Positions 474 through 50,083 of a stretch of 64,000 nt of DNA are shown here, in pieces (positions within the stretch are counted from its first letter, which is position 1; the number at the start of each line of letters is the position of its first letter). The stretch comes from Paramoeba atlantica (Eukaryota; Protista; Discosea), in the NCBI GenBank assembly GCA_977017575.1, contig CDRNVI010000169.1, positions 74,431-138,430 of the forward strand, read 5' to 3'. The notes under the pieces are model-generated. The model made no database searches. It worked only from the letters and a program-made list of their open reading frames with translations, and was not told where the DNA came from. The position numbers and the translations under genes are program-made.

Positions 474-3400
474 TTTATTTATTTTGTTTTTATTTTTAAT
501 TTTATTTTGTTTTTTGTTTTTTGTTTCTTTTATTTTTTTTTTCTTTTTTTTTCTTTTTCTTTCTTTTTCTTTTGTTCTTTTGTTTTCTTTTGTTCTTTTC
601 TAATTTTTCTCTACCTTAAACAGAATTGATAGTTCAAATCTCAAAAGGCGTGGGTTTGGTATGTCTCCATCCAATCTTAAAACAAAACAAAACTCATTTT
701 CCTCAATAACAAAAATCCATTTCCCAAAAAAAATTCACTAAAACAAAACAAAAAAAAAAATAAAACAGACATCAAAATTGTATGGAAAAGTGAAATATCA
801 TTCGGGAGAATCGGGATTGGCGGGGCCACAGAGTCGTTATGTTTCTTTTCCTATTACTGATCGTTTTAGTTCTTTGAAAGAGTTGGTTGGGAAGGGGTCT
901 GTTGGCAAGATTTTGTCTCAGTTGGCTTATACTCCTGTTTATCCTGTTGGTTTGTTTGTTTCTTTTTTTTTTTATTTATTGTTTATTTATTTATTATTTG
1001 TTATTTATTTATTTATTTATTCTATTTTATTATTATCTTTGGGAAGGGGTCTGTTGGCAAGATTTTGTCTCAGTTGGCTTATACTCCTGTTTATCCTGTT
1101 GGTTTGTTTGTTTTTTTTTATTATTTGTTTTTATAAAAATATTTATTTAGATTTATTTAGTTCATTATTTATTTATTTATTTATCTATTTATTATTTATT
1201 TATTTATTTATTATTTATGTTTTAATAAATTACATAAATAATAAAAATTACCGTTGACAAGATTTTGTCTCAGTTGGCTGATACTCCTGTTTATCCTGTT
1301 GGTTGGTTATTTATTTATTTATTTATTTATTTATTATTAACTGATTATTAATTTATTATTGATAAAATGTTAAATGATCAAATGCATTTTTTCTTCTTAT
1401 TTGTTGTTTTCTCTTCTCTTCTCTTCTCTTTTCTCTTTCTAATTCTGAAAAATAGTGATTGTTCCTGGATTTTGTTCGTCTGCTTTAGAAGTTCTTTCAA
1501 GTTATAAATTTCCTGCTTGGGAAAAAACAAGAGTTTTTCTTTCCTTCTCTTCTTTTTTTCTTTTCTTTCGTCTTTTTCTTTCTTTTTCTCTTTCTCTTTT
1601 TCCTTCGTTTTTTTAAGAAAGAATTTTTTTAAAAGGTTTGGATTGATCCAATGAAGATTGGAAATTTGGCCATGTACCAGAAACTTAGAACCAAGTTTTT
1701 TTCTCTTTTTCTTTTTCAAAATCTCTTCTTTTTTTTCTCTTCTTTTTTTTTTCTCTTCTTTTTTAAAATCTCTTCTTTTCTTTTTCTTCTCTTTTTTCCC
1801 TCTCTTCTCTCTCTCTCTCTCCCTCTCACTCATCCCTTTTCTCTCTCTCTTTTCTTTCTCTTCTTTTCTCTCCCCCCTCTCTCTTCTCTTACAATAAAAC
1901 AAAACAGAAAAACAAATGATCCAGTGAGTAGACAGTGGTTGAAACATATTGCTCTTGCTGAGGATGGTTTTTCTGATCCTGAGGGTATTAAAGTCCGTCC
2001 TGGTTTGTTTTGTTTTCTTTTTTGTTTTGTTTTTTGTTTTTTATTTTTTGTTTTTTATTTATTTATTTTTATTTATTTATTTTTATTTTTTTATTTTATT
2101 TTTATTTATTTTTATTTATTTATTTATTTTTAAAAATTTTTATTTATTTTTATTTATTTTTATTTATTTTTTAATTTTTGTTATTTTTTTTTTTTCTTTT
2201 TCTTTTTTTCTTTTATCAATTTATTTCCTGATTCTCATTTTCAAAATAGTGAGTGGATTTTCTGGTTGTGATTATTTGGTTGAACAAACTTTAATTCGTC
2301 CACAATCTTATGTTTTGGGACCTCTTATTGCTAATCTTCTTGATTTGGGGTTTTTTATTCTTTTATTTATTCTAATTCTTATTCTAATGGACGGGATATT
2401 ATTTGTTTTTATTGATTATTTTCATTTTATTTCATTTTATTTTAATTTCTATTTCGTTTTCCTGACTCTTTTTTTTTTAATTATCCTCAAACAAATTAAG
2501 AATTAAGAATCATTAATTTAGAATTCCAAAAATAAAATGCTCATTTAAAAAATTATTTAGTTACGAAGCAAGAAATTTAGTAGCAGCAACATATGATTGG
2601 AGATTACCACCAACAAAATTACAAGAAAGAGATGGTTATTTTACCTATCTTTTTTATCAGATTTCTTCTTTGAGGGAGATTAATCGTCAGCGTGTTGTTT
2701 TGATGGGTCATAGGTTTTTTTTTTTTTCTTTTTTTTTTTTGTTTTTTGTTTTTTGTTTTTTGTTTGTTTTGTTTTGTTTTTTTGTTTTTTTCTTTTCTTT
2801 ATTTTTGTTTTTTTTTTTTGTGTTTTTTTTTTGTGTTTTTTTGTGTTTTTATTCTTTTTTTTTGTGTTTCTTTATTTTGTTTCTAATTTTTAATCTTTTT
2901 TTTTAAAAAAATTCTTTTCTCTTTTCATTCTCCTCTTTCTTTCACCCATCTCCCCCCAACACACCACACAAACACAAACAAACGCAAACAAAACAGCATG
3001 GGAAACAAAGTAATCCACTACTTCCTCCTCTGGGCGGAAAAAAACAAGGGAAAAAAATGGATTGATGAAAATGTCCATTCTTTTATGGCTCTTGGTGCTC
3101 CTTTTTTGGGGGCTCCTAAGGCTGTTCGTTCTGTTGTTTCTGGTGATCGTTTGGATTTGGAAGTTTTTTTGACTTCTTCTGAGGTTTTTTGTTTTGTTTT
3201 TTTTTGTTTTGTTTTTTTATTATTTTATTTATTTTTTATTTATTTTTTATTTATTTTTATTTATTTTTTTATTTTATTGTTATTATTATTATTTCTTTTA
3301 TGGCTCTTGGGGCTCCTTTTTTTGGAGGCTCCTAAGGCTGTTCGTTCTGTTGTTTCTGGTGATCGTTTGGATTTGGAAGTTTTTTTGACTTCTTCTGAGG

Positions 3401-5761
3401 TTTTTTGTTTTGTTTTTGTTTTGTTTTATTTATTATTTTATTTATTTTTTATTTATTTTTTATTTATTTTTATTTATTTTTTTATTTTATTGTTATTATT
3501 ATTATTTCTTTTATGGCTCTTGGGGCTCCTTTTTTTGGAGGCTCCTAAGGCTGTTCGTTCTGTTGTTTCTGGTGATCGTTTGGATTTGGAAGTTTTTTTG
3601 ACTTCTTCTGAGGTTTTTTGTTTTGTTTTTGTTTTGTTTTATTTATTTTTTATTTATTTTTTATTTATTTTTTATTTATTTTCTTTATTCATTCATTCAT
3701 TTATTTATTGTTTTTTATTTAATACTAAATTATTATTCTTTATTTTTCTTTTTTCTTTTTTCTTTTTCTTTTGAAGGGTTATTTTTTATTATTTTTTTTT
3801 TGAAATTTCGGTTTTCGGTTTTCCTTATCTTTTGTGGAAATGATTTATTCTTTTTTCTCTCTCTCTCTCTCTTCTCTCTTCTCCATCTTTTTTTCATTTT
3901 TCTTATTGACTAAAAAAAAAAGGGTCTTGCAATGTGTCGAAGAATGGCCACTCTCCCGTGGCTCTTTCCGGTTGATGAAAGATATCTCCCTGATGTCATC
4001 GGTTTTTTTTCTTTTTCTTTTTTTCTCTTTTTCTTTTTTTTTTCTTTTTCTTTTTCTTTTTTTCTCTTTTTCTTTTTTTTTTCTTTTTCTTTTTCTTTTT
4101 TTTCTTTTTTCTTTTTTTCTTTTTTTTCTTTTCTTTTTTTTTCTTTTCTTTTTCATTTTTTTTCCCTTTCTTTTCTCCTCTCATATCTCTCCTCCCCCCC
4201 CCCCTCTCTCCCTCCCAAACACAAAACCACAGGAAGAGTAAAAAGATCAGGACATTACCAAACACAAAAAATGGCGTCACTTTTAGACTCAACTTCTTCA
4301 GATTCATGGAATTTTTTCAAAACTTTTTTTCAAAAAGATGATTTGTATTTGTTGTGTGACGATTCGAGGGAGAATTCGAGTGTTGTTCTTCCTCCTCCTG
4401 TTATGAGGTTTTTTTTTTTCTTTTTTTTTTCTTTTTTTTTTCTTTTTTTTTTCTTTTTTTTTTTCTTTTTTTTTTCTTTTTTTTTTCTATTTTTTTTCTA
4501 TTTTTTTTTTCTTTTTTTTTCTCTTTCTTTTTTTTTCTCTTTTTTTCTCTCTCTTTTTTTCTCTTTTTCTCTTTGCTTTGAGAAATACTTTGAAGAAATT
4601 GTGTGAATAAAAGAGAATAATTATTTTTTTTAGACCTCCTTCTGTTGATCATATTTGGAATATTTATGGGATTAATATGAAGACAGAAGTTTCTTTTTAT
4701 TATAAAGATGTTGAGCAGGTTTGAAAAAAGAATATTTTATTGTTTTTTTATTTTATTTTATTTTAGATCTCAAAAAAAAAATCTCAAAAAAAATTTCTTT
4801 ATTCTTTTTATTTTTCTTTTTAATATTTGTTTTCATTTCTTTTATTATTTTATTAATAAAAAAATATTAACAATTTTTTAAAAGGGACCTTACCTTGATC
4901 ATAGCGCAGAACAATTTAGGTTTCTTTTGATTCTCTTCTTCTCTTCTCTTTTTCTTTTTTGGTCGACCTCTCACGCTCTTTCTTCTCTCCCTCTCTTCTC
5001 TCTTTCTCCCTCTCCAGTCAGAAAAAATCAGTAGACAATCCAAGAGAATTTTATATCAGTGGAGGAATCGCTTATGAAACTGGTTTTCTTTCTCTTCTCT
5101 CTCTTTCTCTTCTCTCTTCTCTCTTCTCTCTCTTCTCCTTCTGAAGCCCTTTCTCTTCTCTCTCTCTCTCATTCACTCTGTTTTTTTTCCACTTTCCTTT
5201 TAGCAAAAACATATCAACCCGTGATTCGTGCACACAAAAGTGGAGATGGAACTGTCCCTTATTGTTCTTTGTATTATGCTTCTTCTTGGAGGTTTTCTTT
5301 CTTTCTCTTTTCTTTCTCTTCTCTCTCTTTTCTTTTTCTTTCTTTCTCTCTTCTCATTTCCTTTCTCTCTCTTTTTTTCCAAAATTGTAGGAGCCAAACG
5401 CCAGGTGATGGTCTTCCTCATGTCCAAACAGTGGAAATTCCAGGAGTAGAGCACAGGTTATTTAATTTTACAATTGTATTTGATTCTTCAAAAGTGCTTT
5501 TGATATTTTTGTGTCTCTCAATTTATTGATATTCTCTTCTAAAAATTCTTTATCTCTTTTAATTTTCTTTTGGAATTTCTGATTTGATTCAACAATTCTT
5601 CCCTCTCTCTTTCTCTCTTTTGTTGTTCTTTTTACAAAAACAGGGCCATGCTCCAAGATGACTATGTTACATTCCGAATACTTGAATTGTTATCCGAAAG
5701 AGAAAGACGAGATATTAGTGCAACAAGTCATCGAAGGCACGGTGCTGTCTCAGACTCATAA
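1..5761 (+). CDS. LCAT/PDAT (Lro1-like) phospholipid acyltransferase, multi-exon, 5' end outside window; probable C2-like region upstream of the catalytic domain
   Basis: Spliced exons give YPVVIVPGFCSSALEV, WLKHIALAEDGFSDPEGIKVRP, VSGFSGCDYL, AATYDWRLPPTKLQERDGY (2581-2640), the lipase nucleophile VVLMGHS-MG, ALGAPFLGAPKAVRSVVSG, IWNIYGIN, SGDGTVPYCSL and VEHRAML. Stop TAA at 5759-5761. Confidence 0.92.
889..1310 (+). repeat. Three tandem copies of an exon 3' end plus donor site (PDAT gene)
   Basis: GGGAAGGGGTCTGTTGGCAAGATTTTGTCTCAGTTGGCTTATACTCCTGTTTATCCTGTTG|GTT at ~889 and ~1041, with a shorter diverged copy at ~1253. Confidence 0.9.
3082..3625 (+). repeat. Three tandem ~215-bp units, each ~100 nt of exon 3' end plus donor plus T-rich intron start (PDAT gene)
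   Basis: ATGGCTCTTGG..GCTCCTAAGGCTGTTCGTTCTGTTGTTTCTGGTGATCGTTTGGATTTGGAAGTTTTTTTGACTTCTTCTGAG|GTTTT at ~3085, ~3300 and ~3514. Confidence 0.95.
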
Positions 5762-5880
5762 TCATTTAAAAAACTGAATCAGAACTTGATAATATGAAGA
5801 AATATGTATAATAAATTGTTGATATTAAAAGAACTGAGAAACGAAATTTTCATTATCATTATGAAATGAGTCTCTTATTC

Positions 5881-19561: not shown

Positions 19562-20133
19562 CACAAACAAAAACACAAGTATCAATCGATAAAAATAAAA
19601 CTGAAAAAAACAACATCTTTTGAAATAGTTTTCAAAAAAAATTGAACAAAAGACCAAGAAGAGAAGGACGGATTCTGGGAAAGCGAGAATAATCCAATTT
19701 TTTTACAAGTCTTTTTGCAATTACCCCCTATTTTTTGAACAATTGGCCCTATTTTTTGGTCCATTTTTTGGTAGTTTGGGACTTTTTGTCTGGATTTATT
19801 CCTCGAATGTCTTCTCTCGCTGCTCTGTTTCTGAAAAAATGTCTTTGTTCTTCGAAACGAAGAACACGAAAAGAAAAAAGTGTGTTTTCCTTTTTTGTTT
19901 TTTTCATGTTTTGGCTCTTCTTTTTTTGTTCATGAATGCCTCGATCAATAAATTGTGGCACATTTGCAGGAGTCAGCCTCAAGTACAACTTGTTCGATTC
20001 CCAAAAAGTAATGAAAGCAACAGGAACTTTGTTTCTGGTTTTGTTCAACAAATGAAAACTCGCAAATTCAGAAACAGAGAAAAAAAACTTTATTGTGTGA
20101 AACTCAAAAAAAAGAAAAAAAAAAGAGAAAAGA

Positions 20134-20415
20134 GAGAACATGCGGGATTGAACCCTGCAACTCCCCAATTAAACAATAGTCGGGGATCTAGTTTGGCTAT
20201 AATGTCCTCGAAGAAAAATAGATCATAATTTTCCTTTTGAACCCAACTTTTCGAGGTGTTTCACGGAACAATAAAACAAAAAAAAAGCAACAAAAAAAGA
20301 AAAGCGAGAACATGCGGGATTGAACCCTGCAACTCCCCAATTGATCGATAGTCGGGGATCTAGTTTGACTATAATGTCCTCGAAGAAAAATAGATCATAA
20401 TTTTCCTTTTGAACC
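20134..20415 (-). repeat. ~110-bp direct repeat (2 copies) carrying a B-box-like GGGTTCAATCCC
   Basis: 20134-20244 and 20306-20415 are near-identical (GAGAACATGCGGGATTGAACCCTGCAACTCCCCAATT...CCTTTTGAACC). Confidence 0.9.
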
Positions 20416-20445
20416 AAACCCCCCCGCTGGTAAAGTTTGTCGAAA

Positions 20446-20830
20446 AAAGAAGTCGAGTGTCAAAATTATGGGAGTTGAACCCAAAATCCCATCCCAAGAT
20501 TTTCCCCTTCTTTTTCATTTTCGGAGTTTGGTTTTCCAAAGTTTTTGAAGAGACATAATTTTTGGTGGAAAAAAGATGAAGGAAAAAGGTTCGACGATTA
20601 AAATCCAGCTCTCTTTTAAAAAAATCGATTTTTTTAAAATCCAGCTCAAAAAAATCGGCTCATGAAGAACAAAAATAATTATTTTGTCACTCTGCCGCCA
20701 CAAGAAAAAGTTGAGAAAAAAAAAAAGAAGTCGAGTGTCAAATTATGATAGGAATGGGAATCGAACCCAAGCTCAAAACTTTCGACTTAATGAAAACCCC
20801 TGGCCACAGGAAACCCTACCACAGCGGCTC
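20446..20830 (-). other. Two further related tRNA-/SINE-like B-box elements (not intact tRNAs)
   Basis: Shared flank AAGAAGTCGAGTGTCAAA(A)TTATG at ~20447 and ~20726. Minus strand shows GGGTTCAACTCCC and GGGTTCGATTCCC followed by a T-run; A-box-like TGGCCAGGGG starts at 20806. No acceptor stem. Confidence 0.45.
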
Positions 20831-23048: not shown

Positions 23049-23079
<31 letters not shown>

Positions 23080-23082: not shown

Positions 23083-25883
23083 TCAAATTTCTTCCTCATC
23101 ATCAAAATCGGGAAAAGATACAGGGTTTAAGAGACCAAGTTTTCGAACAATTTCTTGTAATGATGAGATATTTGACTTTGCTGTTCTCATACTATCTGCA
23201 ATGTCCTACAAAAAAAAGCAAAAAAAGAATTTTTTTTAAAAAAAAGAAAACACCCTCAAAAATAAAAGAGAAAAAAAGAGAAAAAAGAAAGAAAAAGAGA
23301 AAAAAGAGAAAAAAGAAAAAAAAGAGAAAAAAGAGAGAAAAAAAAACTTGTGTATGTTCGAGGAGAGTTTCCTTCATATGATCAGCAGGTTGTTTCATTC
23401 CAATCCGAGTGGAAACAAACCCTGACGCCAAGAGCATTCCGAGTGTCTCTCTTGATTCTGTGTTGTGTTTCCCTTTTTTTATTATTTATTTTTTTTTTGG
23501 TTTAAAAGAAAAAGAGAGAGAGAGATGTGAGAAAAAATGAGAGATATATTTCTTTTTTTAAGGTTTTTTTTTTGTGTTGTTTCTTCTAAAGAAGAAAAGA
23601 AAAAAGGAAGGAAGAAGGAAGAAGGAAGAAAGAAAAAAAAAAGAAGAAAGATGGGAGAAAAAAAAGGAAGAAAACTTACTCAATTTATCAATGAGTGGCC
23701 TAAAAAAAAAGAAGGAAAAAGATTTGTCAATTCATAATAATGTTTTGAAAAGAAAGAAATTATTTTCAAAGAAAATTCAAAACTGTTCCGTTCCATAATC
23801 AATTGTCTCAGAATCTGTTTCATCTGGTTTCTAATTTTCCCAAAAAAATATTTAATACAAAGTTGAAAAACAATTAAATAAAAAATAGAATCGAACAATT
23901 AAATTTTCATAATCATACAACAATACAACGACACAACAAGAAATACAAGAAATACAAGAAATACAAGAAATACAATAATACAAGAAATACAATAATACAA
24001 GAAATACAATAATACAAGAAATACAATAATACAAGAAATACAATAATACAATAATACAATAACGAAATAAAAAAACAAGACGACAATGTAATAATAATAC
24101 AAGTAAAAAGAGAAGAATGAGAAACCGAATGAAGATATGCTTTTTTGAGCTTGGTAATTCTGCAAAACAAAACAATTCTCAGAATCAAAAGAAAAAGAAA
24201 GGGAAGAGAAGAGAAGAGAGAAAAGAGAAGGGAAAAAAGAGAAGAAGGGAAAAAAGAGAAAAGAAAGAGAAGAGAAAAGAGAAGAGAGAAAAAAAAACCT
24301 TTCAAGATTGGGAGAAGAAGAAGGAGAAGGTCTCTGCAATGGTTTAATTTCTTCTCCCAATTCATCATCATCATCTTCTTCTTCTTCTTCCTCTTCTTCA
24401 TCATCATCATCTTCTTCTTCGAGGTTTCTTGATTTCATGAGCTGCAAAAAATGTTATTCAACATAAAAATTTATTTTTTGAATTTCTCTCTCTCTTTCTC
24501 CCTTTCTCTCTCTTCTCCCCTCTCTTTCTCTCTCCCACTTTCTCTCCTCATTCTCTCCTCCTCTCTCTCTCTCTCTCTCTCTCTCCTCTCTCTTCCCCTT
24601 CTCTTCCCTTTCTCTTCCCCAAAAAACAAAAAAAAAACCTTCGCAAGTTTGGCATGACCAACCGGAGGACGAGGAACAGAAGAGTGTTGTTGTTGTTGTT
24701 GTTGTTGTTGTTGGTTCCCTTTTTTTGCTTCTTGTACTTTTAGTGCTGCTTCTTGTACCTTTTTTTTTATTATTATTTATTTTGGGGGAGAGAGAGGAGA
24801 GAGAGAGAGAGGAGGGAGGAGAGAAGGGAGAAGAGAAGGGGGAGAGAAGGGGGAGAGAAGAAAAAGAAAGAGGGGAAAGAAAGAAAAAGAGAAAGAGAAG
24901 AGGAATTATTTTTTCTGAAATTGTGATTCAATTTAAAAACTTAAATCCAAAAAAAAGAAAATAAAATAAACCTTTTCGATTGCATCTTTTTCTTCTTTTG
25001 AAACACTTTCTTCTCTCTTCTTCTCTTCTTTCTTTCTCTCTTTCCTTTCTTCTTCTTCTTTCTCTTCTTCTTCTTCCTCTTCCTCTTCCTCTTCTTCTTC
25101 TTCTTCATCTTCATCATCTTCTCCTTGGACAACATTTCCTTTTGCCAAACGAGCCATGAGACTACCCCCTTTTCCTCCTCCTCCAAACTTCTTCACTTCT
25201 TTCTTCTTTTCTATTACTTTTATCTCTTCTTCTTCTTCTTCTTCTTCTTCGTCTTCTTCATCTTCTTCATCTTCTTCTCCTTGAACAATTCCTTTTCCTT
25301 TTGCCACTCGAGACATTAATCCAAATTTTGGTGTTTGTTTTTTCTCTGTTTTTTTTTTTGAGAAAGAAAGAAGAAATAAAAATTTATTATTTGAATTATG
25401 AAAGAAAATAAAAACAAAATAAAAATAACAACAAAAATAAATAAAATAAAAATAAATAAAATAAAAATAAATAAAAATAAAAACAATAAGCCAAGAAGAA
25501 AAGAGAAAAGAGAAAAAGAAAAAGAAAAAACCAGATTGATGAAAGTGAAGAAGACAAAAAATTTGATTTTTGGAAATTCGAAAATTTGAGAGATTTAATT
25601 CTTTCTTACAAATTGTACAAAGAAAACATTCCTATTATTTTTATTTTTATTTTTATATTTCTATTTCTATTTCTATTTCTTTTTCTTTTATTTTCTTTTC
25701 TTCTTTTCTTTTCTTTTTCTTTCCTTTTTTTTTCTTTTCTTCTTTCGTCTCTTTTTCTTATTTTCTTCATTTTTTTCTTCTCACCTGATGATAAATTCGA
25801 TCAAGGGAATTGAGTTTAACTTCAATTTTGTTTTCACCTTCGACTTTTTTCTCACAAACTGGACAATTTTCCTTTTCAGACAT
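23083..25883 (-). CDS. LIM domain + acidic repeats + BLOC1S3-like C-terminal coiled coil, multi-exon
   Basis: Exons 1-2 read MSEKENCPVCEKK...IYHQECFLCTICKKEL...IFCLLH (LIM zinc ligands). Two VQGE(E/D)DE acidic repeats follow. C-terminus: KPDETDSETIDY...LIDKLKSRETL...DIADSMRTAKSNISSLQEIVRKL...FPDFDDEEEI*. Confidence 0.75.
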
Positions 25884-26302: not shown

Positions 26303-29300
26303 ATGACAACAATAACAACACAAATCGAAGTATTGGAAAAAGCATGTTCACCATTTGGAGAAAGAAAAGAAACTGATTTTTCTCTTTCTTCTTCAAAATC
26401 TGCTCCTTCTGTTTCTCTTTCTTCTTCTTCTTCTGGTTTTTTTTTGTTTTTTTTTTTTTTGGAAAGAGAAGGAGAGAAGAAGAGAAGAAGAGAGAAGAGA
26501 GAAGGAGAGAAAGAGGAGAGGAGAGAGAATTTTATTCCATTTTTTTTCTTCTCTTCTCTCACATTCTTTCTTTTCCTTCTCCTCTCTTTTCTCTCCTTTC
26601 CTCCTCTCTCTTCTTTCCTCTTCCTCTTTCCTCTTTTCTTTTCTTTCTTCTTTCTTTTCTCTCTCTTTCTTTCTACTCTTTCTCTCCTTCTCTCCTTCTC
26701 TCTCTTTCCTCTCTCTCTTTCCTCTCTCTTTCTCTAGAAATAAGTAGAGAACAAAAGATACAAGCAATAAGAGGAGCAGCTCGTCATTTGGTTACTGTTC
26801 GTATTCCCAATGTCCAAAAAGCAAAGAAAGAATTTGTCTCTCTTCTTCAGGTCTCTCTTTTCTCTCTCTTTTCTCTCTCTTTTCTCTCTCTTTTCTCTCT
26901 CTTTTCTCTGTCATTTGGTAATACATGTTTTCTCTCTTTTATGATTAATATTCTTTTATTACTTTAATAAATTAATTCATTATTAACAAAAAAATACAAG
27001 AGAAAATAGTTCGATATTTGTTATTAATACATGATTGATATCTTTTTTATTAAATCAATAAGTTAATTTAATAAAATTACTAACAAAAAAACAACAACAA
27101 CAACAGAAAATAGTTCGATATTTGTTATTAATACATGTTATTAATTATTTAATGAATTAATTCATTTCTAACAAAAAAAACACACAACAGAAAATAGTTC
27201 GAGATTTGTTATTAATACACGATTTATATCTTTTTTTATTAAATCAATAAGTTAATTTAACAAAATTACTCACAAAAAAAACAACAGAAAATAGTTCGAT
27301 ATTTGTTATTAATACACGTTATTAATTATTTAATTCGTTTCTAACAAAAAACACACACAACAGAAAATAGTTCGATATTTGTTATTACTACATGATTTAT
27401 ATCTTTTTTTATTAAATCAATAAGTTAATTTAATAAAATTACTAACAAAAAAAAACAACAACAACAGAAAATAGTTCGATATTTGTTATTAATACATGAT
27501 TGATATCTTTTTTATTAAATCAATAAGTTAATTTAATAAAATTACTAACAAAAAAACACACAACAGAAAATAGTTCGATATTTGTTATTAATACATGGAG
27601 ATTCAGATCAAAATGTTTGTACTGCTGGGACTGAGGCCCTTTTTATTGTGTTGAGAGAGTTTGTTACTAAGCCTTATGCTGATATTATTATTCTTCAAGT
27701 TTTTAAAGGTTTTTTTGTTTTTTTGTTTTTTTGTTTTTTTTTTTGTTTTTTTTTTTGTTTTTTGTTTTTTGTTTTTTGTTTTTTTTTTGTTTTGTTTTTT
27801 TGTTTTTTGTTTTCCATTTTTATTTTTTATTTACTTTATTTGCTTTTATTTACTTTTGGAAAAGTGATTTTTTTTTAAAAAAACTTTTTTTTCACAGTTA
27901 TTAGACCATCATATCCTTCACGGACCGTTCGAGGTTTCTTTTCTCTCTTTTCTCTCTCTCTCTCTTCTTTATCTCACTCCTTTTCTCTCTCTCTCTTTTC
28001 TATTTCTACAGCGGGACTAAACATAATAGGAGCAATATCAAAACATATTAAACCAGCCAGAAGTAGAAAATATCTCAAAACTGTTCTCCAAACAATTGAA
28101 TTTCTTCTCGGTGTTGTTCAGAGAGAGAAGAGGGAAGAGAGAGAGGAGGGGAAGAGAGAAGAGGAGAAGGGGGGAGAGGAGAAGGGAGAGAGAGGGAGAG
28201 AGAGGAGGGGAGAGAGAGAAGAAGAGTTTTTTGGGGATCCGTTTGGGGTGAGAAGAGATCCTTTGGTTCATAAGGCTGTTTCTGAGATGATTGAAAATGT
28301 TTCTGAGATTTTGATTTTTTATATGAGAGAAAAGGAAGCTCAGAGTTTGATTGAGTTGTTGAGGTTTTTTTTTTTTCTATTATTTTTTATTTTTTGTTTC
28401 TTTTTTATTTTATTATTTTCAGTTTAAAATCAAATAAAGATAATTCTTGGGTTGAGAGGCACTTTTTCGTATTCTGAAAGAAATTCCTCCTTTCTTCTCT
28501 CCTTTCTTCTCCTTTTCTCTCCTTTTCTCTCTCCTTTTTTTTCTCCCTTTCTTTCCCCAGCTCCTATCTCACAGACAAACTGCCGGCCATTCGCCGTTCC
28601 GCCTCATCTTCGATTAGTAGTATTTGCCGTCACTACCCGAAAAATGTCTTTGCTTTTGCTGTGACACAACTCACCATAATTTGGGATCGTCACGCTCCTC
28701 TTTTAGAACATCGAATTCGAGTTCTTTTCTTCTTTTTTTTTCTTCTTTCTTTTTCTTTTCTGTTTTTGGTTTATTATTTTTCATAGACCCCAAGTTCAGT
28801 GAGAAACCTCTCTGTCCCTTCAAGCGACGAGGTTGCGAAAGAGGGGAAAGAGTTGAAGAGAACTTTGTCTTCTCCTCAAACAACAAATCTATCAACTCCA
28901 ACAACAGCAGCTCCAACAACAGCTCCAACTCTTTCAACTTCAACTCCAGTTCCAAATATAGGAGGAAATGGAACCAATTTTGGAACAAATGGGGGGACAC
29001 CGGAGGGGGTTGCTCATGGTGTATTAATTGCTTGTTTGGATTTGGTTAAACTTTCTGGTTCTTTTTATTCTCGTTCTCGTGATGTTCGCCAACCTATTTT
29101 GCCTCATTATCCAGGTTGGATTTTTTCTTTTTCTTTTTTTTTTCTTTTTCTTTTTCTTTTTTTTTTTTCTCTTTTTTTTTTTCTCTTTTTTTTATTCTTC
29201 TCATTTTTTGAAATAGTTCTTTTTCGTTTTTTGTTGGAAGTAACTGAGAAACCACTTGATCAGGTTTCTTTTTCCTTTTCTCCTCTTCAATCTCTTTTCT

Positions 29301-32300
29301 TTTTCTAAATTTTATTTAAAGAGCGCAAATTTAATGGCAGCAGCATGGGAGTTATTTTCAGAAATATTATCCACACACGGCCATATCATCAATGCTCTCC
29401 AACCCCCCTTTTCTTCCTCTGTTCCTATTTCTTCCTCTTCTTCTTCTTCTTGTTCACAACAACCACAACAACCACAACAACCACAACAACCACAACAACC
29501 ACAACAACCACAACAACCACAACAACCACAACAACCACAACAACAACCGCGTCTCTCTCCTCTCTCTTCTCTTACTGCAATGACTCCACCAATGGGGAGA
29601 ATGTCACCTCGTTCTACTTCTCCCTCTTCTACTACTGCCCCTTCTCCTCTTCTTTCTCTTGCAGGGTATAAATCTGATGACGACTTTGAATATAGTGGGA
29701 CAGAAGATGAAGATGGTCTCAAAGTAAGTCTTGAAGATGAGATGAAAGGAAGAGAGAGAATATTGAGAAAGAAAATTTGTGTCAATCATAATTGGGAAGA
29801 TGGATTGGTTCATTTTCGGTATCATTGTCATTGTCATTTACCAAATATTATTACCATTTTGGACAGATTAATTACTTGTTTGCTCCCCCAATCTGTTTTA
29901 ACCCAAACGATAAAAACTCCAATTAGAGAAGGAGAAGAGGGAGAAAGAGAGAAGAGAGAAGAAAAGAGAGAGAAATTACCTTGTAAAGTGAGTGTGTCTG
30001 CTCCTGCTCTTAGTGTACTCTCTCTCTTGGCGACTGAGTATTTTCCTTGTTTTTGGTATATTCTCTTTCGGACTGATTATAAGAACCCTTGTTCTGTTTT
30101 GAAAGGAGGAGAGAGAAAAGAAGACTCCAAAAGAGAAGAAGATAAAAGAGAAGAGAAGAAAAGTGAAGGAAAAACAATTCTAGAAACAATTCTAGAAATC
30201 TATTCAAAGGAAACAGACCCATTGTTAAGAGGGGAATGTGTTTTATTATCTGGTGCTTTAATTCGTTCTCTATTAATTTGTCCTCTCCCTCTTGATTCTC
30301 CTCTTTCTTTTCGCTCTTCTTCTTCTTTATCTTCTTTATCTTCTCTAGCTTCTTCTTCTTCTTCCACTCTTTCTTCCTCTCTCAATCTCTCTTCCTTCCT
30401 TCCTCTCCTTTGCAAAATTGTTTCGCAAGGGATAGAAGATAACTCTGCTACAACTTCCAAATTGGCTATCCGTTCTCTTTCTTTCTTTCTCTCTTCTTTG
30501 GTGGCGAGTTGCTATGCAAGATCGAGTGGCCTCCCTCTTATTCGTTCTCTTCTTCTTTTTCCTTCTTCTACTTACTGGGTTGTCAAAAAAGAACTTTTAT
30601 CAAGTTTGGGAGGAATTGATTTTTTTGTTTTGAAACCAATATTGAAACTTTCTTCTTCTCTCTCTTCTCTTTCTTCTCTTCCTTCTTCTTCTTCTCAACT
30701 TGATTTATTGTCAAGACCACATGGAATGGGGTATGAGGGAGATATACAAGAAGAAGTTGTGAGATATATTTTGGGACAATTGATTGATACTGATCATCGT
30801 GTTCGACAAACTGCTGCTGAGGCACTTGTTGATTTGCTTCCTCGTCTTTCTTGTTATTCTCAGGTTTTCTCTTTTTTTTCTCTGATTTTTCTCTTTTTTT
30901 TGATGAACTAAAATTAATTCTTCTTTTTTGCAACAATTAAAACAAATAAAACATAAAAAATTCACATTTTCTCACAAAAAAAAAAACATACAAAAAAAAA
31001 TACTCCAGCTCGGAACATCAAACTCAGTCCCACATCTTCTCTCTTCCTTTCAAAACCACCATCTAGCAGAAGATTCCCCCTCAGATTTCCAATCTTTTTT
31101 TCGACACACAATAATAACAAATTTGTCTTTTTTGATGTCTAAAATTGTTAGTTTGTGTGACGAAATGGGGGGGGATTGTGGAGATGGTGATTGGGAAGAT
31201 GGTTTTTTGAGAAAAGATTCGAGCGCTCATGTTCAGCAGAGGGTTGAGGGTTTGAAGGGGGTTTGTTGTTTAATTTATTTTCTTGATATTTTTATTTATT
31301 TATTTATTTATTTATTTCTTCTTATTTATTTCTTTATTTCTTTATTTTTTTTTATTATTATTAGATCTTTATCTACTTTTATTCTTCCTCCTTATTTATT
31401 TCAAAATTTAAATTTCTTTACTTCTTCAAGGTGTACTTGGCAATGGTCCTCTTAACCGAAAGAAATTGGCTCGAAGAAAAACACATCCGAACCTTTTTCA
31501 CAATGTGGAAAAATCTCGGCCGAGCAAAAGAAGGATGTGGAATATTTTCCCCTCCCTTCTCTCTTTCTTCTTCTCCCTTTCCCTCTCTTTCTCCATCTGA
31601 TCTTGATGTTGAGGCTCCTGAGGGTGGAGGAGGGGCTGGTGTTGAGTTGATACATCCGATGGGTGTTTATTCTTCTGATATTCTTCCTTTGCTTTTTGAG
31701 AGGTTTGTTGGTGGCGGTTTTGAGAGAGAGTGAGAGAAGAAAGAAAGAAGAAAGGAGAAGAAGATCGAGAAATAGAAAGAAAGAAAAGGAAGAAAAAATT
31801 ATCGATTTTGGTGAATTTTAATCAAAACAAATTAACAACAGATTTTGTTTCTCACCAATATTGGCTGATATTGAAGGATCAATTCTTTTATTACGATTAA
31901 TTTATGTTTTGTTTGACAAAAGTGGGAGTTTGGCTGATGATTATGCTCCTTTTGCTTTGTATCATGTTTTGAGATTGATTTCTATGTTGACTGCTTTGAA
32001 AAGAAGGTTTTTTTTTCCTTTGTTTTTTTTTCCTCTTTCTTTTTTCTTTTTTTTTTTAATCCTCTCTCTTCTTCCAAAGCAATTTCACTCTCGCATTTTC
32101 TGCAGTCTGCACTGGGTTCCCTCTCTTCTTTCCTCCCACTCCTCAACAACCAACTCCCCAACCAACTCCCCAACCACCACCGCCCTCTACCTCTCCTCCA
32201 AGACAAAGAACAAAACAAAGAAGAGGAGAGAGGGGAGAGAGAGGAGGAGAGAGGGGTTCGGGATTGAGGGGTGCTTCTCCTTCTTCTTTGGGGGGGAATG

Positions 32301-33754: not shown

Positions 33755-33785
<31 letters not shown>

Positions 33786-39444: not shown

Positions 39445-39475
<31 letters not shown>

Positions 39476-42400
39476 TCTCTCTCTTCTTCCACATTGTTTC
39501 CAATTGGCGGATCTTCTTCTTTTGCAACTTGATTGTTCACTTGTTTCTCTTCTTGCTCCCTCTCTCTCTTCTCGGATGGTTTTCTTTCTTCTTTCTCTTT
39601 CTCTTTCTCTTTTCTCTCTTTCTTACTCTTTCTTTTTATTTCTTCTTTCTTTTATTCATTTTTTAAAAAAAAATAGGGAAACACAGGACCAGATGTGAAA
39701 AGAGAAAAAAATCAACAAAATGATGTTTTTTCTGAGAATTCTCATCATCATTTTTCGACAAAATGGTTTCTTTTCTTTTCTTTCTTTTTTTCTTTTCTTT
39801 TCTTTTCTTTTCTTTCTTTTTTTCTTTTCTTTTCTTTTCTTTTCTTTCTTTTCAAATATTTTTAAATAATTGAATGAAATATTTGATATTTTAATTCAAT
39901 ATTATTGAATTATTCTTTTTCTTTTTCTTTTTCTTTTTCTTTTTCAGGGATCACAAACAAAATCTCTCAATTGAAGAAGAAAACAAAATTATTGTCGAAA
40001 GTTGGATTGGAATTTTCTTTCTTCTCTCGAATAGTGCCTCTTCTTCTCTTTCTTCTTCTCTTTCTTCTTCTCTCTCTGCTCAGGTGGTTTTTCTTTTTCG
40101 TTCTCTCCAATTCTTTTTTTTTCTTTTTTTCTTTTTTTCTTTTTCTCTTTTTTCTCTTTCTCTTTTTCTCTTTTTTTATCTTTTCAACAGGAATTTCAAA
40201 AAATGAATCCATTTAAAATTCAACAACAATCACAAGAAGGAGAAGGAGAAGAAGAAAGAGAAAAACAGGAAGAAAAAATTTTGCGATCTTTATGTTTTTT
40301 TGCTCCTCTTCTTTGGCTCCCTCGCGGTTTCTTAGGTTAATAAAATAAGAAGAAAAAAGAAAGAAAAGGGAAGAGAAAAGACAAAAAAGACAAAAAAAAA
40401 GACAAAAATCAAAATCAAAAATAAGAATAATAAATAATAAATAAATAAAATAATAAATAAAAATAATAATAAAAATAATAAATAATAAATAAATAAATAA
40501 ATAAATAAATAAAACTAGGAGGAGAAAAATACAGAGAATTTGGAGTCAATTTTCCTTTTATTTTCGAAAATCCTTCTTCTTTTTCTTCTTCTTCTTCAAA
40601 TATTTTGGTTCTTCTTGGCACTCAAATTGCTTCTTCTCTTTCTAATTGGTTTTTTTTTTTGTTTTATTTTATTTTTTTTTGTTTTATTTTTTATTTTTGT
40701 TTTATTTTTGTTTTATTTTTATTTTATTTTTATTTTATTATTCTTTTAATATTATTTATTGAGAGTTTTGTGTTTTTTTGTTCTTTTTTGAGACTTCTTT
40801 TTAATTTCTCTCTTTACCTTCGTCTCTTCAGCTGGGGGAAAACAACCTTTCATTCTTTGTTGACTTTTGTGTGGACACTCGCTCAGGTTTCTGAGAGGAA
40901 AAAGAGAAGAGGATAGAAAAGAAGAGAGAGAGAAGAGAAAGAGAGAGAGGAGAAAAGAGGAAGAAAGAGAACCTTTCTTTTTATTATTATTTTCTGATTT
41001 TATTTTGTTAGAATTCGCATTTTCATTTTTTCCCGCAATATGACGAACCTTATCCTGAGGAGGTTCTTTTTTTTTTGATCAATTTAATAATTAAATAAAA
41101 AAAGAAAATAAATAAAATATCAATAAAATAACTAAAAGAAATCAACAAAAGAAATCAATAAATATTTTAAATACAATAAAAATCATAAAAAATAAAAAAT
41201 AAAAATAAAAATAAAAATAAAAATAAAAATAGGGGAATTTATGTTTGCACGTATTACCATATCTTCCTTTCCATCCCTCTGTTTTTGGAGAACAAGAAAG
41301 ACCTCCCAGAATTGATGATGTTGAATATCTTGATTTACTTCTTAAGGTTTTCTTTCTTTCTCTCTTCTCTCTCTCTCTCTCTTTCTCTCTTTCTCTCTTT
41401 CTCCTTTTTTTTCTGTTTTTGGAGAACAAGAGAGAACCCCGAAAATTGATGATTTTTTTATTTAAGGGGATTTCTATCTCCTCCCTTCTTTTCTCTCATC
41501 TTTTCTTATTTTTAAAATGTTAACTTACCTCTCTCTCTTTCTCTCTCTCTCAGATGCTCAGCTCATGCAGTGCGAGAAATGGAGAAATATTTTATCATTA
41601 TTGGGATTTGTTGAGCGCAATTCTCTTTCGTGATCCGAAACTTGCTTTGGAGAATATTAATGAGGTTCATTTTAAAAGAAAAGAGAAGAAAGAGAAGAAA
41701 GAAGAGAAGAGAACAAGAGAACAAACAAAAAAAAAAGAACAAAGAAAAAAAACAAAGCCAAAAAAAATGGTGGCAAAATTTGATTTTTCTCCTCTCTCTT
41801 CTCTCTCTCTCTTCTTCTCCTCTCTTCTTCTCTTTCTCCTCTCTCTTCTCTCTTTTTCTTCTTCTTCTCTCTTTCTTCTCTCTCTTTTGTGACACAGGTG
41901 ACGTTAAGTCTCTCATTATCAGGTCTCGTGACACTTTTGACGAATTCATTTTTGGAAATTGATGGAGGAAAACCTCTTCCCATTTCTTCTTCTTCTTCTT
42001 CTCCTCTCTCTTCTTCTTCTTCTTCTCTCTCTTCTTCTTCTTCTTCTTCTTCTCTTTCTTCTCGGTCTTCTTCTCCTTTGGGTGTGGAGAGGGGAGAGGA
42101 GGGGGAGAGGGAGTTGGGAGGAGAGAGAGAAGAGGAGAAGAGAGGAGAAGAGAAGGGAGAAGAAGATGAAGATTTATCTAGTTTGGTTTGTTTTTTATTT
42201 TTATTTTTTATTTTTTATTTTATTTTTTAATTCTTTTTTCATTTCTTTCATTTCTTTCAAAAAGAGAGAATTAAATCAATTCAATTCAATTGAATTAAAT
42301 TAATTTTTTAACAAAACAAAATAGGATTTAATAGAATCAGATCCACACTCTTCAGTTCTAATCCACGCTCCAAGAGAGAGAGATTTTTCTCTTTTTATGC

Positions 42401-43237: not shown

Positions 43238-43278
<41 letters not shown>

Positions 43279-43928: not shown

Positions 43929-44004
<76 letters not shown>

Positions 44005-47000
44005 TGATCTTCTTTTACTTGTATTTCATTTCTCTTCTTATTAAATTCTGGCGGGAATAGGGATCAACCATCTTGACCCCAAATTGGGCACCAGGACTTG
44101 TTCTCATTGATTCTTATGCTGGTTCTCTTTCTCTCTCCTCTCTTTCTCTCTTCTCTTTCTTTCTTCTCTTTCTCTCCTCTCTTTCTTTCTTCTCTTTCTC
44201 TTTTTTAATTTTTATTGGTTTTAGATTGCGCTGTTGGGAAAGGAGAGGGAGATATGTGGTTGAGTGTTTGTGGTGGAGAAGATCTTGGTCTCTTCTTTCT
44301 TTCTTCTCTTTCTTTCTTCTCTTTCTTTCTTCTCTTTCTTTTTTCCCTCTATTTCTCTTTCTTACTTTCATCTCTCTTCCTTTCCTCTCTCTCTCTCTTC
44401 TTCCTCTTCTTCTCAGATGAAGAAACTTTTCCTTTTATCCCAAGAGGATGGGGAGGGCATTTTTTCCCTGATCTGTGTTGGCCTTATAACCTAAATTTGG
44501 AGGTTTTTTCTCTTCTTCTCTTCTCTTCTCTTCTCTCCCTCTTCTCTTTTTTTCTCACGAGAAATTTTTAGAGATCACTCTTTCCTTCTTCGCGATTTTA
44601 TTCTGGACAACTTTCAGGTTTGTTTTTTTGAAAATAGAGAGAGAGAGAGGATGAAGATACTTTAAAAAAATTTAATTTAAATATTTTTTTCATGATTTCT
44701 ATTTTCTCAGTATTTATCAATTGTTGTTAAAAAAATTAATTTGTATTAAAAATTTTTATTTGAATTTATGATTATTTATTTCTAATATTTTTTAAAAAGT
44801 AAAACAAATCCGAAAAACAATGGAAGCTTCTCTCCGCACAAATACAACCTCTCTCTCTTCTATCTCTCCCTCTTCTTCTTCTTCTTCTTCTCTCTCTTCC
44901 CCAGGCCCCTCTCTCTCTCGTCCGTCTTCTTCTTCTTCTCTCACAACCTCTTCTCTTCCAAAGAGAGGGTCTTCTTCTTCTCTCATCTCTGTTGCTTCTG
45001 ATCTCCGCATTACAAATATCATCCGACTCGCAAGAGAAGGAGAAGAAGGAGAAGAAGAAGAGAGAGAGAGCGGAGAGAGAGAAGAGAGAGAGGGAGAGGA
45101 GAGAGGAGAGAGAAAGAGAAAGAGAAAGAGAGAGTGGTCTCGGCTCGGAAAGAGAGAGAGGGGGATGTACATTGGGGGCGTTTTTGGTTGGAATTATACT
45201 GTTTCTCATCATTTACATTGTTTGGAATTGTCTACTACTATGGAAACTCAGGTTTTCTCTCTTTTCTCTCTTTTCTCTCTTTTCTCTCTCTTTCTCTTTC
45301 GTTTTCTCTTTTCTTTTCCATAAGAATAATTTGTGGAGATTGAAATTTCTTTTTCTTGATTTTTTAAAATAATTCATTTTTTTTTTCAAAAAAAAAAGAT
45401 ATTTTCGGTTTTGGAACTTATTTTGTCTTCTGATATTGGATCAATTCTCTCACAAGAGGTTCTTTTCTTCTTTCTTTTTCTCTTTCTCCTTCTCTCGTCT
45501 CTCTCTTTCTCTCTCTTCTCTCTCGTCTCTCTCTTCTCTCTCTTCTCTCTCTCTCTCTTCTCTCTCTTCTTCTCTCTTCTCTCTCTTCTCTCTCTTCTCT
45601 CTCTTCTCTCTCTTCTCTCTCTTCTCTCTCTTCTCTTCTCTCTCTTCTCTCTCTTATCTTTTCTCTTCTTCCTTTTCTCTTCTTTCTCTTTCTCTCTCTC
45701 TCTCAGGCAATTCGAAGTGTTTTGGTGTTGTCTGATTTTTTTGATCAATCTCGTATGGAATGGATGCTTACCAAATTTGTTTCTTTTCTTCAAGTTTTTT
45801 TTTTGTTTTTCTTTATTATTTATTATTTATTATTTATTATTATTTATTAAAATATTATATTTTATGATTTATGATTTATTATGATTTATTACAAATTTTG
45901 ATGAAGCTCGTGTGGAATGGATGCTTTCCAAATTTGTTTTCTATTAATATTCAAAATTAAGTAACTCTCTCTCTCTCTCTCTCTTTTAAACAGCAAGAAC
46001 CAGTTGATGTGGTATTGACTCGTTCATTTTTAACTTTGGGAATTTTTAAAGCAATTGCTGTTTTGAGTGGAATGTCTGGGTATGCTTTTTTTTTTCTTTC
46101 TTTCTTTTCTCTTTTCTTTTTTTCTTTTCTTTTTTTTCTTTTTCTTTTCATTTTTTTTTTGGTTCTGAGATTTTTTCTCTTTCTCTTTCTTTTGTCTTCT
46201 CATTTCTCTTTTCTTTCAAGACAAACATCAGTGGAGGGAGTAATAGAACAAATCATCGCCCAACCAACAGGTATTTTTCTCTCTCTTCTCTTCTCTTCTC
46301 TTCTCTTCTTTCTTCTCTCTTCTCTCTTCTCTCTTCTCTCTTCTCTCTTCTCTCTTCTCTCTTCTCTCTCTTCTCTTCTCTCTTCTCTTCTCTTCCTCTT
46401 CTCTCTTCCTTTCTTTTCTAACCCTTTTAAAAAAGGGAGTGGGATTACCGGGTTACTCAGAACAAGTTTGGAGTCTCCTTATAAATCTGTTCAGGTTTTT
46501 TTTTCTTTCTTTTTCTTTTTCTTCTCTTCTCCCTTCTCTCTCTTTCTCTCTCTTCTCTCTCTTTCTCTCTCTCTCTCCCTCTCTTCTCTTCGTGTTCATT
46601 TTGATTTGGTATTAATAGATCGCTGCCTTGAATGGGATATTGTATTTGCTAGATGCTTCCCTTCACAAGGTAAAGGAGAGAAAGAGAAAGAAAGAGAAAG
46701 AAAAAGAAACAATAATTCAAAGAAAAAAGAAATATTAATCTTTTTAATTTTATTAAATTTAATTTTATTAATTTTATTTAATAATTTTTCAAAAAAAAAC
46801 AGGTTTTATCACCAAATCTTGAATTTTTATTTCATTATATTTTAAATATATTGAAATCTGAAGTTGTTGTTTCTCATCTTCCTCTTACGTTGCATGCTCT
46901 TGCTGGTTTTCTTTTCTCTCTTCTCTTTCTCTCTCTTCTCTCTCTTTCTCTTCTCTCTTCTCTCTCTTTCTCTCTCTTTCTCTCTTCTCTCTCTTCTTTT

Positions 47001-47972: not shown

Positions 47973-48004
<32 letters not shown>

Positions 48005-50083
48005 AGAGAGAAAGTGAAAAGAGAAAAGAGGGGAGAGAGAAGAAAATAGAAGAATGTTATTTAATAATTGAATTTATTTTTTCTTTTTTAACTTATTAAA
48101 TACTAAATTAAAGATTAAATTAAAGATTAAAATATTAAATTAAAGATTAAATTATTAAATTAAAGAATAAAATATTTAATTGAAAAAAAAACAACTTTTT
48201 TTAGGGATTGGCACCGGTTGAAAGCAAAAAAACACACATGGACAACATTGAAAATATGAAGGTTTTTTCTTTTTCTTTTTTTTTTCTTTTTTTTTTTCTT
48301 CTTTTTTCTTTTTTTTTTAATTCAAATTTCTATTTTTTTTTGTGAATTATTTATTCTTTTTAACAATTAAAAACAAACCAAAAAAATTAAAATCAATTCA
48401 AAACAAAAAATAATTAAAAATGAAATTAAAAACAGATTTTATTGAGAAAAATGAGAAAAGCGGAACCTCTCGAAGCTCAAACCGCTTCTTATCTTCTTCC
48501 TCAACTTTTAATTGGTTTGTAATTTTGTTTTTTTTGTTTTCTTTTTGTTTTTATTTTGTTTTCTTTTTGTTTTTTTTTTTTGTTTTCTTTTTGTTTTTAT
48601 TTTTTTTTTTGATACTTCTGTGATTTTAATGTCTTCTTCTTCTTCAAGAATTAAGAAAATAAATAAATAAATTAAATATAAAATAAAATAAAAATAAAAT
48701 AAATAGATTTTTTTACTGTGGATCAATCAATGAGTCTTCTTCTTCAAGAATTAATCAATAAATATAAATAAATAAAATAAAATTAAATAAAAATAAATTA
48801 AATAAAAATAAAATAAATAGATTTTTTTTACTGTGGATCAATCAATGAGTCTTCTTCTTCAAGAATTAATCAATAAATTTTAATAAATAAAATTAAATAA
48901 AATAAAAATAATATAAATAAAATAAATAATAAATAGATTTTTTTACTGTGGATCAATCAATGAGTCTTCTTCTTCAAGAATTTGTTCGTATTAAAAGACA
49001 TCGAACTCCTTTGTATTCTCTTTTTTTTTTCTTTTTTTTTTCTTTTTTTTTTCTTTTTTTTTTCTTTTTATTTTCTTTTTATTTTCTTTTTCTTTTTATT
49101 ATTTCTTATTATTTCTTTCTTTCTTTTCTTTTTTTTTTATTCTTTTCTTTTCTTTCTTTTTTCTTTCCTCTTTCTTTTCTTTTTCTTTTTTCTTTCATTT
49201 TTCGAAATCTCACTCTTCTCTTTTAAGATATATTGCGACAACAGTAAGTTTATATCTTCATTTGTTACAATGCGCTCAGAATGTCGATTCCTCTGAATAT
49301 GAACAGGTGAGAAAAGAGAACAGAGAAAGAGAAAAAAAGAAAAAAGAAAGAGAGAAAAAGAGAAAGAAAGAAATCAAGAAGAAGGATTCTCTTTTCTTTC
49401 TCTCTTTTTCTTTCTTTCTTTTTAATTTGTTTTTTTTTTTTTAGATGGCATTAAATTGGTTGGTTGTCTGTTTGAAAAATTTCACACAGGTTTCTTTTTC
49501 TCTTTTTCTCTTTTTCTCTTTTTCTCTTTTTCTCTTTTTCTCTTTTTCTTTTCTTTTCTTCCCTTTTGAATCTCCTGAACTCTCTCTTTCTTTCTCTCTT
49601 CTTTTCTCTCTCTCTTTCTAGTTACGACCTCAAGAAGTGGGGAAATGGTGTTTGGCTGTTTTGATGTTATCTTTTTCAAGAAATAAATCTCTTCAAAAGG
49701 TTTTCTTTCTCCCCCACCTCTCTCTTCTTTCTTCTCCCTCTCTTTCTCTCTTTCAAATACAATAAGAATAAGAATAAGAAGAATAAATATAATACTAATA
49801 AATAATAATAAATAATAAATAACATAAATAAAAAAATAAAAATAATAAAAATAAGTAATAAAAATAAAAGTGATAAAAAAAAATAAAAGTAATAAAAAAA
49901 TAAAAGTAATAAAAAAATAAATAAAAAAAATAGTTAAGTGTGGGGATACTACACAGCTATCCATTTGTACGAAGTGATATTTTAATTCCTGCTTTTGTTG
50001 ATTTTTTCTTTCATCCAATGGCTCTCAAATTTCGAGGAGAGGTTCTTTTTTTTTTCTTTTTTTTTTTTTTTTTTTTTTCTTTT

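What the first reader, a model, noticed from the sequence alone, without database searches (positions are those of the whole stretch)
889..48985. Recurrent 'splice-site echo' arrays: exon ends tandemly copied into introns in several genes
Seen in sequence: at least six loci, in the PDAT and htt genes and more weakly in GtaA, carry intronic copies of an exon end, often with its splice site (889-1310, 3082-3625, 27001-27600, 41278-41453, 45738-45945, 48610-48985). In donor-side arrays the first copy is the coding one; in acceptor-side arrays the last copy is. Decoy copies have diverged and usually run into stops or frameshifts. Inference: a junction-centred slippage or unequal-crossover process inflates introns. 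The spliceosome must therefore ignore near-perfect decoy sites, or use them for regulated unproductive splicing or new exon birth.
Basis: partly seen in the sequence, partly recalled or inferred. Interest (0 to 1): 0.78.

Follow-up and report, generated by a model that had tools for sequence, protein, structure and literature searches.

The report
Exon-end copies left inside introns
Several introns of two genes in this intron-dense, AT-rich protist hold head-to-tail spare copies of the neighbouring exon end, often with an intact splice site; they look like ordinary small tandem DNA duplications that survive only where the spare copy lies inside an intron, not a new process aimed at splice junctions.

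Summary
All six loci hold direct, adjacent copies of an exon end plus flanking intron: 17 spare copies in the window, 12 of them at least 97% identical over the exon-derived part. Most of the young copies keep a splice site as good as the real one. The same thing occurs on another contig of this genome (C140).

The inference of a junction-centred process is not needed. Junctions here lie about every 100-150 bases. Randomly placed duplications of the observed unit sizes would therefore give the junction type in 33% of exon-containing cases. That rises to 59% once frame-breaking exon-only and whole-exon duplications are removed. I observed 8 of 11 (p = 0.27 against 59%).

[quoted passage not shown] follows from the geometry of a tandem duplication. 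It is not an extra finding.

Whether the decoys are ignored, feed unproductive splicing, or give new exons cannot be tested without RNA data. Two 72-base in-frame cassettes in the LCAT/PDAT-family gene look enough like exons that an ab initio model calls them.

The closest precedents are internal tandem repeats at exon-intron boundaries and the tandem genomic duplication model of intron change. Earlier notes of this scan describe the same kind of copies on other DNA of this genome.

Verdict: real, but a new member of a known kind, of modest interest.

The parts
887..949 (+). L1 coding copy: 3' end of an exon of the LCAT/PDAT-family gene. The donor GT is at 950 and the intron runs 950-1455.
   Evidence: Sequence read; donor score at the 64th percentile of called donors.
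1039..1101 (+). L1 decoy 1, with an identical donor.
   Evidence: 63/63 identical to 887-949; TRF period 152. Using its donor would add 152 bases, a frameshift.
1253..1301 (+). L1 decoy 2, with a weaker donor (GTTGGT).
   Evidence: 47/49 identical; donor at the 33rd percentile.
3078..3183 (+). L2 coding copy: end of the exon 2997-3183, which matches Pfam LCAT.
   Evidence: Pfam LCAT E = 2.2e-15. It also aligns to group XV phospholipase A2 residues 169-215.
3293..3399 (+). L2 decoy 1. It contains the in-frame 72-base cassette 3328-3399, bounded by a new AG and an identical GT.
   Evidence: 104/107 identical with one extra base. The home-made HMM calls it an exon. Its translation equals that of the coding copy.
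3506..3612 (+). L2 decoy 2. It contains the in-frame 72-base cassette 3541-3612.
26963..27566 (+). L3 array inside intron 26851-27566. Six units each hold the intron 3' end, an AG and the first 28-31 bases of the exon. Two unit types alternate, giving a higher-order period of about 173.
   Evidence: Decoy acceptors score at the 59th-73rd percentile, against the 62nd for the real one.
27567..27708 (+). L3 coding copy: the exon that follows the array.
   Evidence: Open reading frame continuous with the previous exon. The gene carries Htt_N-HEAT further downstream.
41278..41346 (+). L4 coding copy: end of the hand-read exon 41235-41346.
41412..41456 (+). L4 decoy, older. The GT is lost and a stop lies in frame.
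   Evidence: 39/45 identical.
45739..45793 (+). L5 coding copy: end of the hand-read exon 45707-45793.
45896..45954 (+). L5 decoy, older. Only weak GTs lie nearby.
   Evidence: 50/59 identical with a net 4-base gap. Nearby GTs score at the 11th-14th percentile.
48605..48867 (+). L6 decoys inside intron 48515-48936: 48605-48652 (38/48), 48707-48752 (46/46) and 48823-48867 (45/45).
48937..49014 (+). L6 coding copy: the exon that follows the array.

Best explanation
These are small local tandem duplications of DNA with units of about 85-215 bases. One breakpoint happened to fall in an exon and the other in the adjacent low-complexity intron.

A duplication of this kind does no harm to the message, provided the splice site that stays joined to the rest of the exon is still used. 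That site is the first copy on the donor side and the last copy on the acceptor side. The spare copies then simply become intron.

Duplications lying wholly inside an exon, or spanning a whole exon, usually break the frame or insert a long repeat, and are removed by selection. Duplications wholly inside an intron vanish into simple sequence. So the junction-straddling class is the one that is both tolerated and visible.

Once two copies exist, unequal exchange between them builds arrays of 3-7 copies with higher-order structure.

Inferred, not shown: the decoys are probably mostly ignored because a truncated exon end carries only one of the two splice sites needed to define an exon. The risky exceptions are copies that have acquired the missing partner, such as the two 72-base cassettes in L2.
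For: - Orientation and adjacency: 8 direct and 0 inverted local repeats in the window. Exon ends match only their own intron, in direct orientation.
- Unit content: units are contiguous genomic exon plus intron, so the event is at DNA level.
- No dispersed source: the exon-derived half of the L2 unit occurs nowhere else in the 45.7-Mb assembly.
- Repeat-rich setting: TRF gives 575 rows in 64 kb, with many intron-only arrays.
- Nested history: L2 copies 2 and 3 share three differences from copy 1. L3 alternates two unit types.
- Same kind elsewhere: contig C140 has a minus-strand gene with a decoy 94/96 identical and the same donor, plus an older decoy at 48/69. It also has a second locus with the GT lost.
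- The other classes exist but are rare and in frame: a 156-base exonic duplication at 25069-25316 and a 75-base exon plus intron repeated about seven times on C140.
- Null model: junction type is expected in 33% of cases without selection and 59% with a frame filter. Observed 8 of 11, p = 0.009 and 0.27 respectively.
- Precedent: tandem repeats at exon-intron boundaries and tandem genomic duplication are described in PMC2812944, PMC3443670 and PMC2891723.
Against: - The sample is small: 264 kb and 11 exon-containing duplications.
- The exon map comes from a home-made HMM that misses short exons and calls some decoys exons.
- Among units of 80 bases or more in genes, junction-type arrays outnumber intron-only ones 8 to 1, against about 60% expected. 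I put this down to poor detectability of long units made of simple sequence, but did not prove it.
- No reads, RNA data or sister genomes were available.
- Several exon-derived parts are 100% identical while the simple-sequence part of the same unit has drifted. This fits fast slippage in simple sequence, but gene conversion or selection is not excluded.
Confidence: 0.8

Rival explanations
1. A mutational process aimed at splice junctions: slippage or exchange is triggered at or near exon-intron boundaries, for example by the T-rich or polypyrimidine tract that begins each intron. Junction duplications would then arise more often than elsewhere.
For: - Without any selection filter the junction type is over-represented: 8 of 11 against 33% expected, p = 0.009.
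- Among long units it outnumbers intron-only arrays 8 to 1.
- In donor-side units the intron-side breakpoint lies 60-120 bases into the T-rich intron start.
Against: - The excess disappears once frame-breaking classes are removed (p = 0.27).
- The exon share of the unit (0.3-0.5) is what exon lengths allow.
- Intron-only tandem arrays of shorter period are far more common.
- No common breakpoint motif was seen.
Confidence: 0.08
2. The decoys are used. They could act as regulated unproductive splice sites that tune expression through mRNA decay, or as newborn in-frame exons. Candidates are the two 72-base cassettes in L2 and the 30-base units of L3 that end in a GT.
For: - Young decoys carry splice sites as strong as the real ones.
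- The L2 cassettes are in frame and open, are bounded by AG and GT, and are called as exons by an ab initio model.
- Published cases show that repeats at exon-intron boundaries can give alternative splicing (PMC2812944).
Against: - There are no RNA data.
- The copies are too young for any test of selection.
- Exon-derived parts are no better conserved than the unique intron parts of the same L3 units.
- Repeating 24 residues next to the GAP motif of an LCAT-type hydrolase core is unlikely to be tolerated. This is my inference from the alignment.
- Old decoys have often lost the site, though not significantly so (3 of 5).
Confidence: 0.1
3. Assembly artefact: the arrays are over-expanded or mis-joined in the assembly, and the genome holds single copies.
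For: No reads were available to check. Some differences between copies are length changes in T runs, which are a typical long-read error.
Against: - Copies differ by substitutions that are shared in a nested way (L2), and by alternating unit types (L3).
- Older, decayed copies exist (L4, L5, C140).
- Assemblers tend to collapse short tandem repeats, not expand them.
- The same kind recurs on another contig.
Confidence: 0.03

Closest known systems
Internal tandem repeats at exon-intron boundaries (De Grassi and Ciccarelli 2009, PMC2812944); internal gene duplications (Gao and Lynch 2009, known to me only as cited in PMC3443670)
   Same: Head-to-tail duplication of a gene segment that spans an exon-intron boundary. 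It duplicates splice sites, changes intron length and can create alternative splicing.
   Different: - The published cases are in recently duplicated primate genes or come from broad surveys. These are in single-copy genes of a protist.
- This genome's introns are almost pure simple sequence and its splice signals are minimal (AG|GT followed by T-rich sequence).
- Usage of the sites was not tested here.
Intron gain by tandem genomic duplication of an AGGT-bearing exon segment (reviewed in PMC3443670; Drosophila cases in PMC2891723)
   Same: A tandem duplication supplies duplicated splice signals, and the spare copy ends up as intron.
   Different: In that model a new intron is born inside an exon, between the two AGGT copies. 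Here the unit already contains part of an existing intron, so an old intron is lengthened and no new intron position appears.
Pseudo-exons, decoy splice sites and poison exons
   Same: Splice-site look-alikes inside introns that the spliceosome must ignore, or may use to produce unproductive mRNA.
   Different: Those are defined by RNA evidence and often by conservation. Neither is available here.

Membership tests
Local tandem duplication spanning an exon-intron boundary | Copies are direct, head to tail and adjacent to their source. | tested here: met
   TRF arrays; 8 direct and 0 inverted local repeats in the window; adjacency-specific matches.
Local tandem duplication spanning an exon-intron boundary | The unit holds contiguous exon and intron DNA, and one copy is continuous with the reading frame. 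| tested here: met
   LCAT and Htt_N-HEAT exons confirmed with Pfam.
Local tandem duplication spanning an exon-intron boundary | The copies do not come from a dispersed mobile element. | tested here: met
   The exon half of the L2 unit matches only its own three copies in the whole assembly. Only the T-rich intron half matches elsewhere. Tested for L2 only.
Intron gain by tandem genomic duplication (AGGT model) | A new intron is created between duplicated AGGT sites within former exon sequence. | tested here: not met
   Units include 60-140 bases of typical simple-sequence intron, and the introns extend far beyond the arrays. The ancestral state could not be checked because no relatives were available.
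Introner or transposon-derived intron sequence | Many dispersed near-identical copies with element ends or target-site duplications. | tested here: not met
   No dispersed copies of the exon-derived part. No inverted repeats in the window.
Regulated unproductive splicing or poison exon | The decoy site is used in RNA, the transcript responds to decay, and the site is conserved. | not testable with these tools
   No RNA data and no related genomes.
   Observed 8 of 11 against 59% expected, p = 0.27. The sample is small and the exon map approximate.

The most novel reading that the evidence does not exclude
Either this genome has a duplication process truly biased to exon-intron boundaries, perhaps triggered by the T-rich or polypyrimidine tracts that begin its introns. 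Or some decoys are in use: as new in-frame mini-exons (the two 72-base cassettes at 3328-3399 and 3541-3612) or as built-in unproductive splice sites that set expression levels. In the second case the arrays would be exon birth or splicing control caught in the act.
Probability: 0.12. Interest if true: 0.65.

Novelty: new member of a known kind. Interest (0 to 1): 0.3.

Why it matters
- The arrays are a hazard for gene annotation. An ab initio model called two decoys as exons and used part of a third to keep the frame.
- They are a natural experiment on splice-site choice. Up to six acceptors, or three donors, of equal strength compete in a genome whose splice signals are little more than AG|GT.
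- They show one concrete way in which introns here grow.
- They do not call for a new mechanism.

Tried and rejected
The null test therefore rests on 264 kb.
- Pfam on short single exons near L1 and L4-L6: no hits. Only the exons at 2998-3183 (LCAT) and 29256-30908 (Htt_N-HEAT) are confirmed. That L4-L6 belong to the huntingtin-like gene rests on strand and continuity alone.
- Joined spliced models: not searched. Exons were searched one by one, by reference.
- Taxonomy from the protein atlas: uninformative.
- Branch-point motif: no consensus. CTAAC occurs in 7 of 241 called introns, so the TACTAAC in the L3 units cannot be weighed.
- Extra conservation of the exon-derived part of decoys: in L3 it is no better kept than the unique intron part.
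- Selective loss of splice sites in old decoys: 3 of 5 lost, against about 28% expected by my rough estimate. Not significant.
- GtaA echo: only CT-rich chance matches.
- Rfam and ARAGORN on the window: nothing.
- The Gao and Lynch paper is not held in the library.

Full report
**Setting.** The window is G000:C169:74431-138430 of a 45.7-Mb, 248-contig assembly. It is AT-rich and dense in short exons. The introns are almost pure simple sequence, T- or CT-rich on the sense strand. TRF reports 575 rows in 64 kb. I do not know the organism, and the protein atlas gave no useful taxonomy. Pfam confirms an LCAT/PDAT-family exon at 2998-3183 (E = 2.2e-15) and a huntingtin N-HEAT exon at 29256-30908 (E = 4.6e-18). 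Short exons near L4-L6 gave no Pfam hit. Their assignment to the huntingtin-like gene therefore rests on strand and continuity. Exons were searched one at a time, by reference.

Dust-masked self-blastn finds eight local direct repeats in the window and no inverted ones. Searches give the details:
- L1: the exon end 887-949 is repeated at 1039-1101 (63/63 identical, same donor) and 1253-1301 (47/49).
- L2: 3078-3183 is repeated at 3293-3399 and 3506-3612 (104/107, one extra base, same donor at the 85th percentile of called donors).
- L3: six copies of the acceptor plus the first 28-31 exon bases lie between 27003 and 27498. Their acceptor scores are about equal to or above the real one.
- L4 and L5: one older copy each (39/45 and 50/59), with the donor lost or weak.
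- L6: copies at 48707-48752 (46/46), 48823-48867 (45/45) and 48605-48652 (38/48).

I also ran a systematic scan of 512 called exon ends against their own intron. It gives 5 hits at score 25 or more, against none for the reverse complement and none in 1536 comparisons with other introns.

The weaker GtaA case was not found.

**It is general in this genome.** The 200 kb I could fetch from contig C140 holds three further cases:
- A minus-strand gene whose exon end is copied 212 bases downstream in the transcript (94/96 identical, same donor), with an older copy beyond it (48/69, donor lost).
- A second donor-side echo with GT changed to TT.
- An array of about seven units of a 75-base exon plus its intron.

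Earlier notes of this scan report the same kind of copies on other pieces of this genome. I treat those as leads only.

**What the copies are.** Each unit is a contiguous piece of genomic exon plus intron, repeated head to tail next to its source. This points to duplication at the DNA level, not to RNA-mediated copying.
- The exon half of the L2 unit occurs only at its own locus in the whole assembly, so no mobile element is involved.
- L2 copies 2 and 3 share three changes relative to copy 1.
- L3 alternates two unit types, giving a period of about 173 bases.

So a first duplication was followed by further rounds, most simply by unequal exchange between existing copies.

**Is the process junction-centred?** I built a 13-state HMM exon finder, trained on the window plus C140. 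Its median exon is 115 bases and its median intron 132 bases. It recovers most of the LCAT-family gene but misses some short exons.

On this map, randomly placed units of 100-213 bases span exactly one junction in 29-36% of placements.

I then compared only classes that contain exon sequence, which are equally detectable. Random placement predicts 33% junction-type, 39% exon-only and 27% multi-junction. Removing placements that would break the reading frame changes this to 59%, 25% and 16%. I observed 8, 2 and 1. For the junction class this gives p = 0.009 against the raw null, but p = 0.27 after the frame filter. Both exon-only cases are in frame (spacings of 156 and 48 bases), and the whole-exon case has a 75-base exon. 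That is what selection would leave.

Intron-only tandem arrays are abundant at periods of 40-62 bases. Long-period intron-only arrays are rare: one, against eight of junction type. I attribute this to long units of simple sequence being reported at their short internal period, or being masked. I did not prove that.

The rule [quoted passage not shown] follows from geometry. Only the copy still joined to the rest of the exon can give the right message.

**Splice signals and the decoys.** Called donors read (A)G|GT followed by T-rich sequence. Acceptors are preceded by A- or purine-rich sequence, not by a pyrimidine tract. No branch-point consensus emerges.

Young decoys keep sites identical to the real ones. 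Using the L1 decoy donor would add 152 bases, a frameshift. The L3 decoys run into stops within 11-20 codons.

L2 is different. A G-to-A change shared by both decoys creates an AG, so 3328-3399 and 3541-3612 are 72-base in-frame cassettes encoding the same 24 residues as the real exon end. The HMM calls both of them exons. The segment aligns to residues just after the LGAP motif of group XV phospholipase A2. I judge that a repeat there would be poorly tolerated.

My inference is that truncated exon ends are mostly ignored because they carry only one of the two sites needed to define an exon. This is not shown.

**Checks that came to nothing.**
- Exon-derived parts of the L3 decoys are no better conserved than the unique intron part of the same units.
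- Loss of the splice dinucleotide in old decoys (3 of 5) is not beyond neutral expectation.
- An assembly artefact is unlikely, given the nested substitutions and the decayed older copies. It cannot be excluded without reads.

**What is already known.** Tandem repeats at exon-intron boundaries that alter splicing are described for human genes (PMC2812944). Tandem genomic duplication is an accepted route of intron change (PMC3443670; PMC2891723). The loci here differ from the classic AGGT model because an existing intron is lengthened, rather than a new one created.

**Verdict.** It is best explained by ordinary local tandem duplication in repeat-saturated genes, followed by selection. It is a new member of a known kind and of modest interest. 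Its main value is as an annotation hazard and as a natural test of splice-site choice.

Noticed in passing
window 20106-20419: An intergenic 172-base unit is duplicated in tandem (93% identical). On the minus strand it contains a tRNA-like T-arm. Similar fragments lie at about 20440-20500 and 20730-20830. ARAGORN and Rfam call nothing here.
   Followed up: partly
window 25069-25316 (minus-strand gene): An in-frame tandem duplication with about 156-base spacing lies inside an acidic, E/D-rich coding stretch. It is the exon-only class of the same duplication process.
   Followed up: partly
window and L009-L028 (called introns): Splice signals are minimal. Donors read (A)G|GT followed by T-rich sequence. 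Acceptors are preceded by A- or purine-rich sequence, not by a pyrimidine tract. No branch-point consensus is seen: CTAAC occurs in 7 of 241 called introns.
   Followed up: partly
L025:7468-8608 (C140 187468-188608): About seven tandem units, each a 75-base open exon-like segment plus its purine-rich intron. This is either a repeated-exon gene or an array of whole-exon echoes.
   Followed up: no
window 2998-3774: One open reading frame of 258 codons runs through all three L2 copies and the T-rich intron pieces between them. Intron retention or decoy-donor use here would not meet a stop.
   Followed up: no
L009-L028 (C140 20001-220000): Intron density is very uneven. Simple-sequence introns and tandem arrays crowd into about 172-200 kb of the sampled stretch, while other parts have long exons and few arrays.
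   Followed up: no
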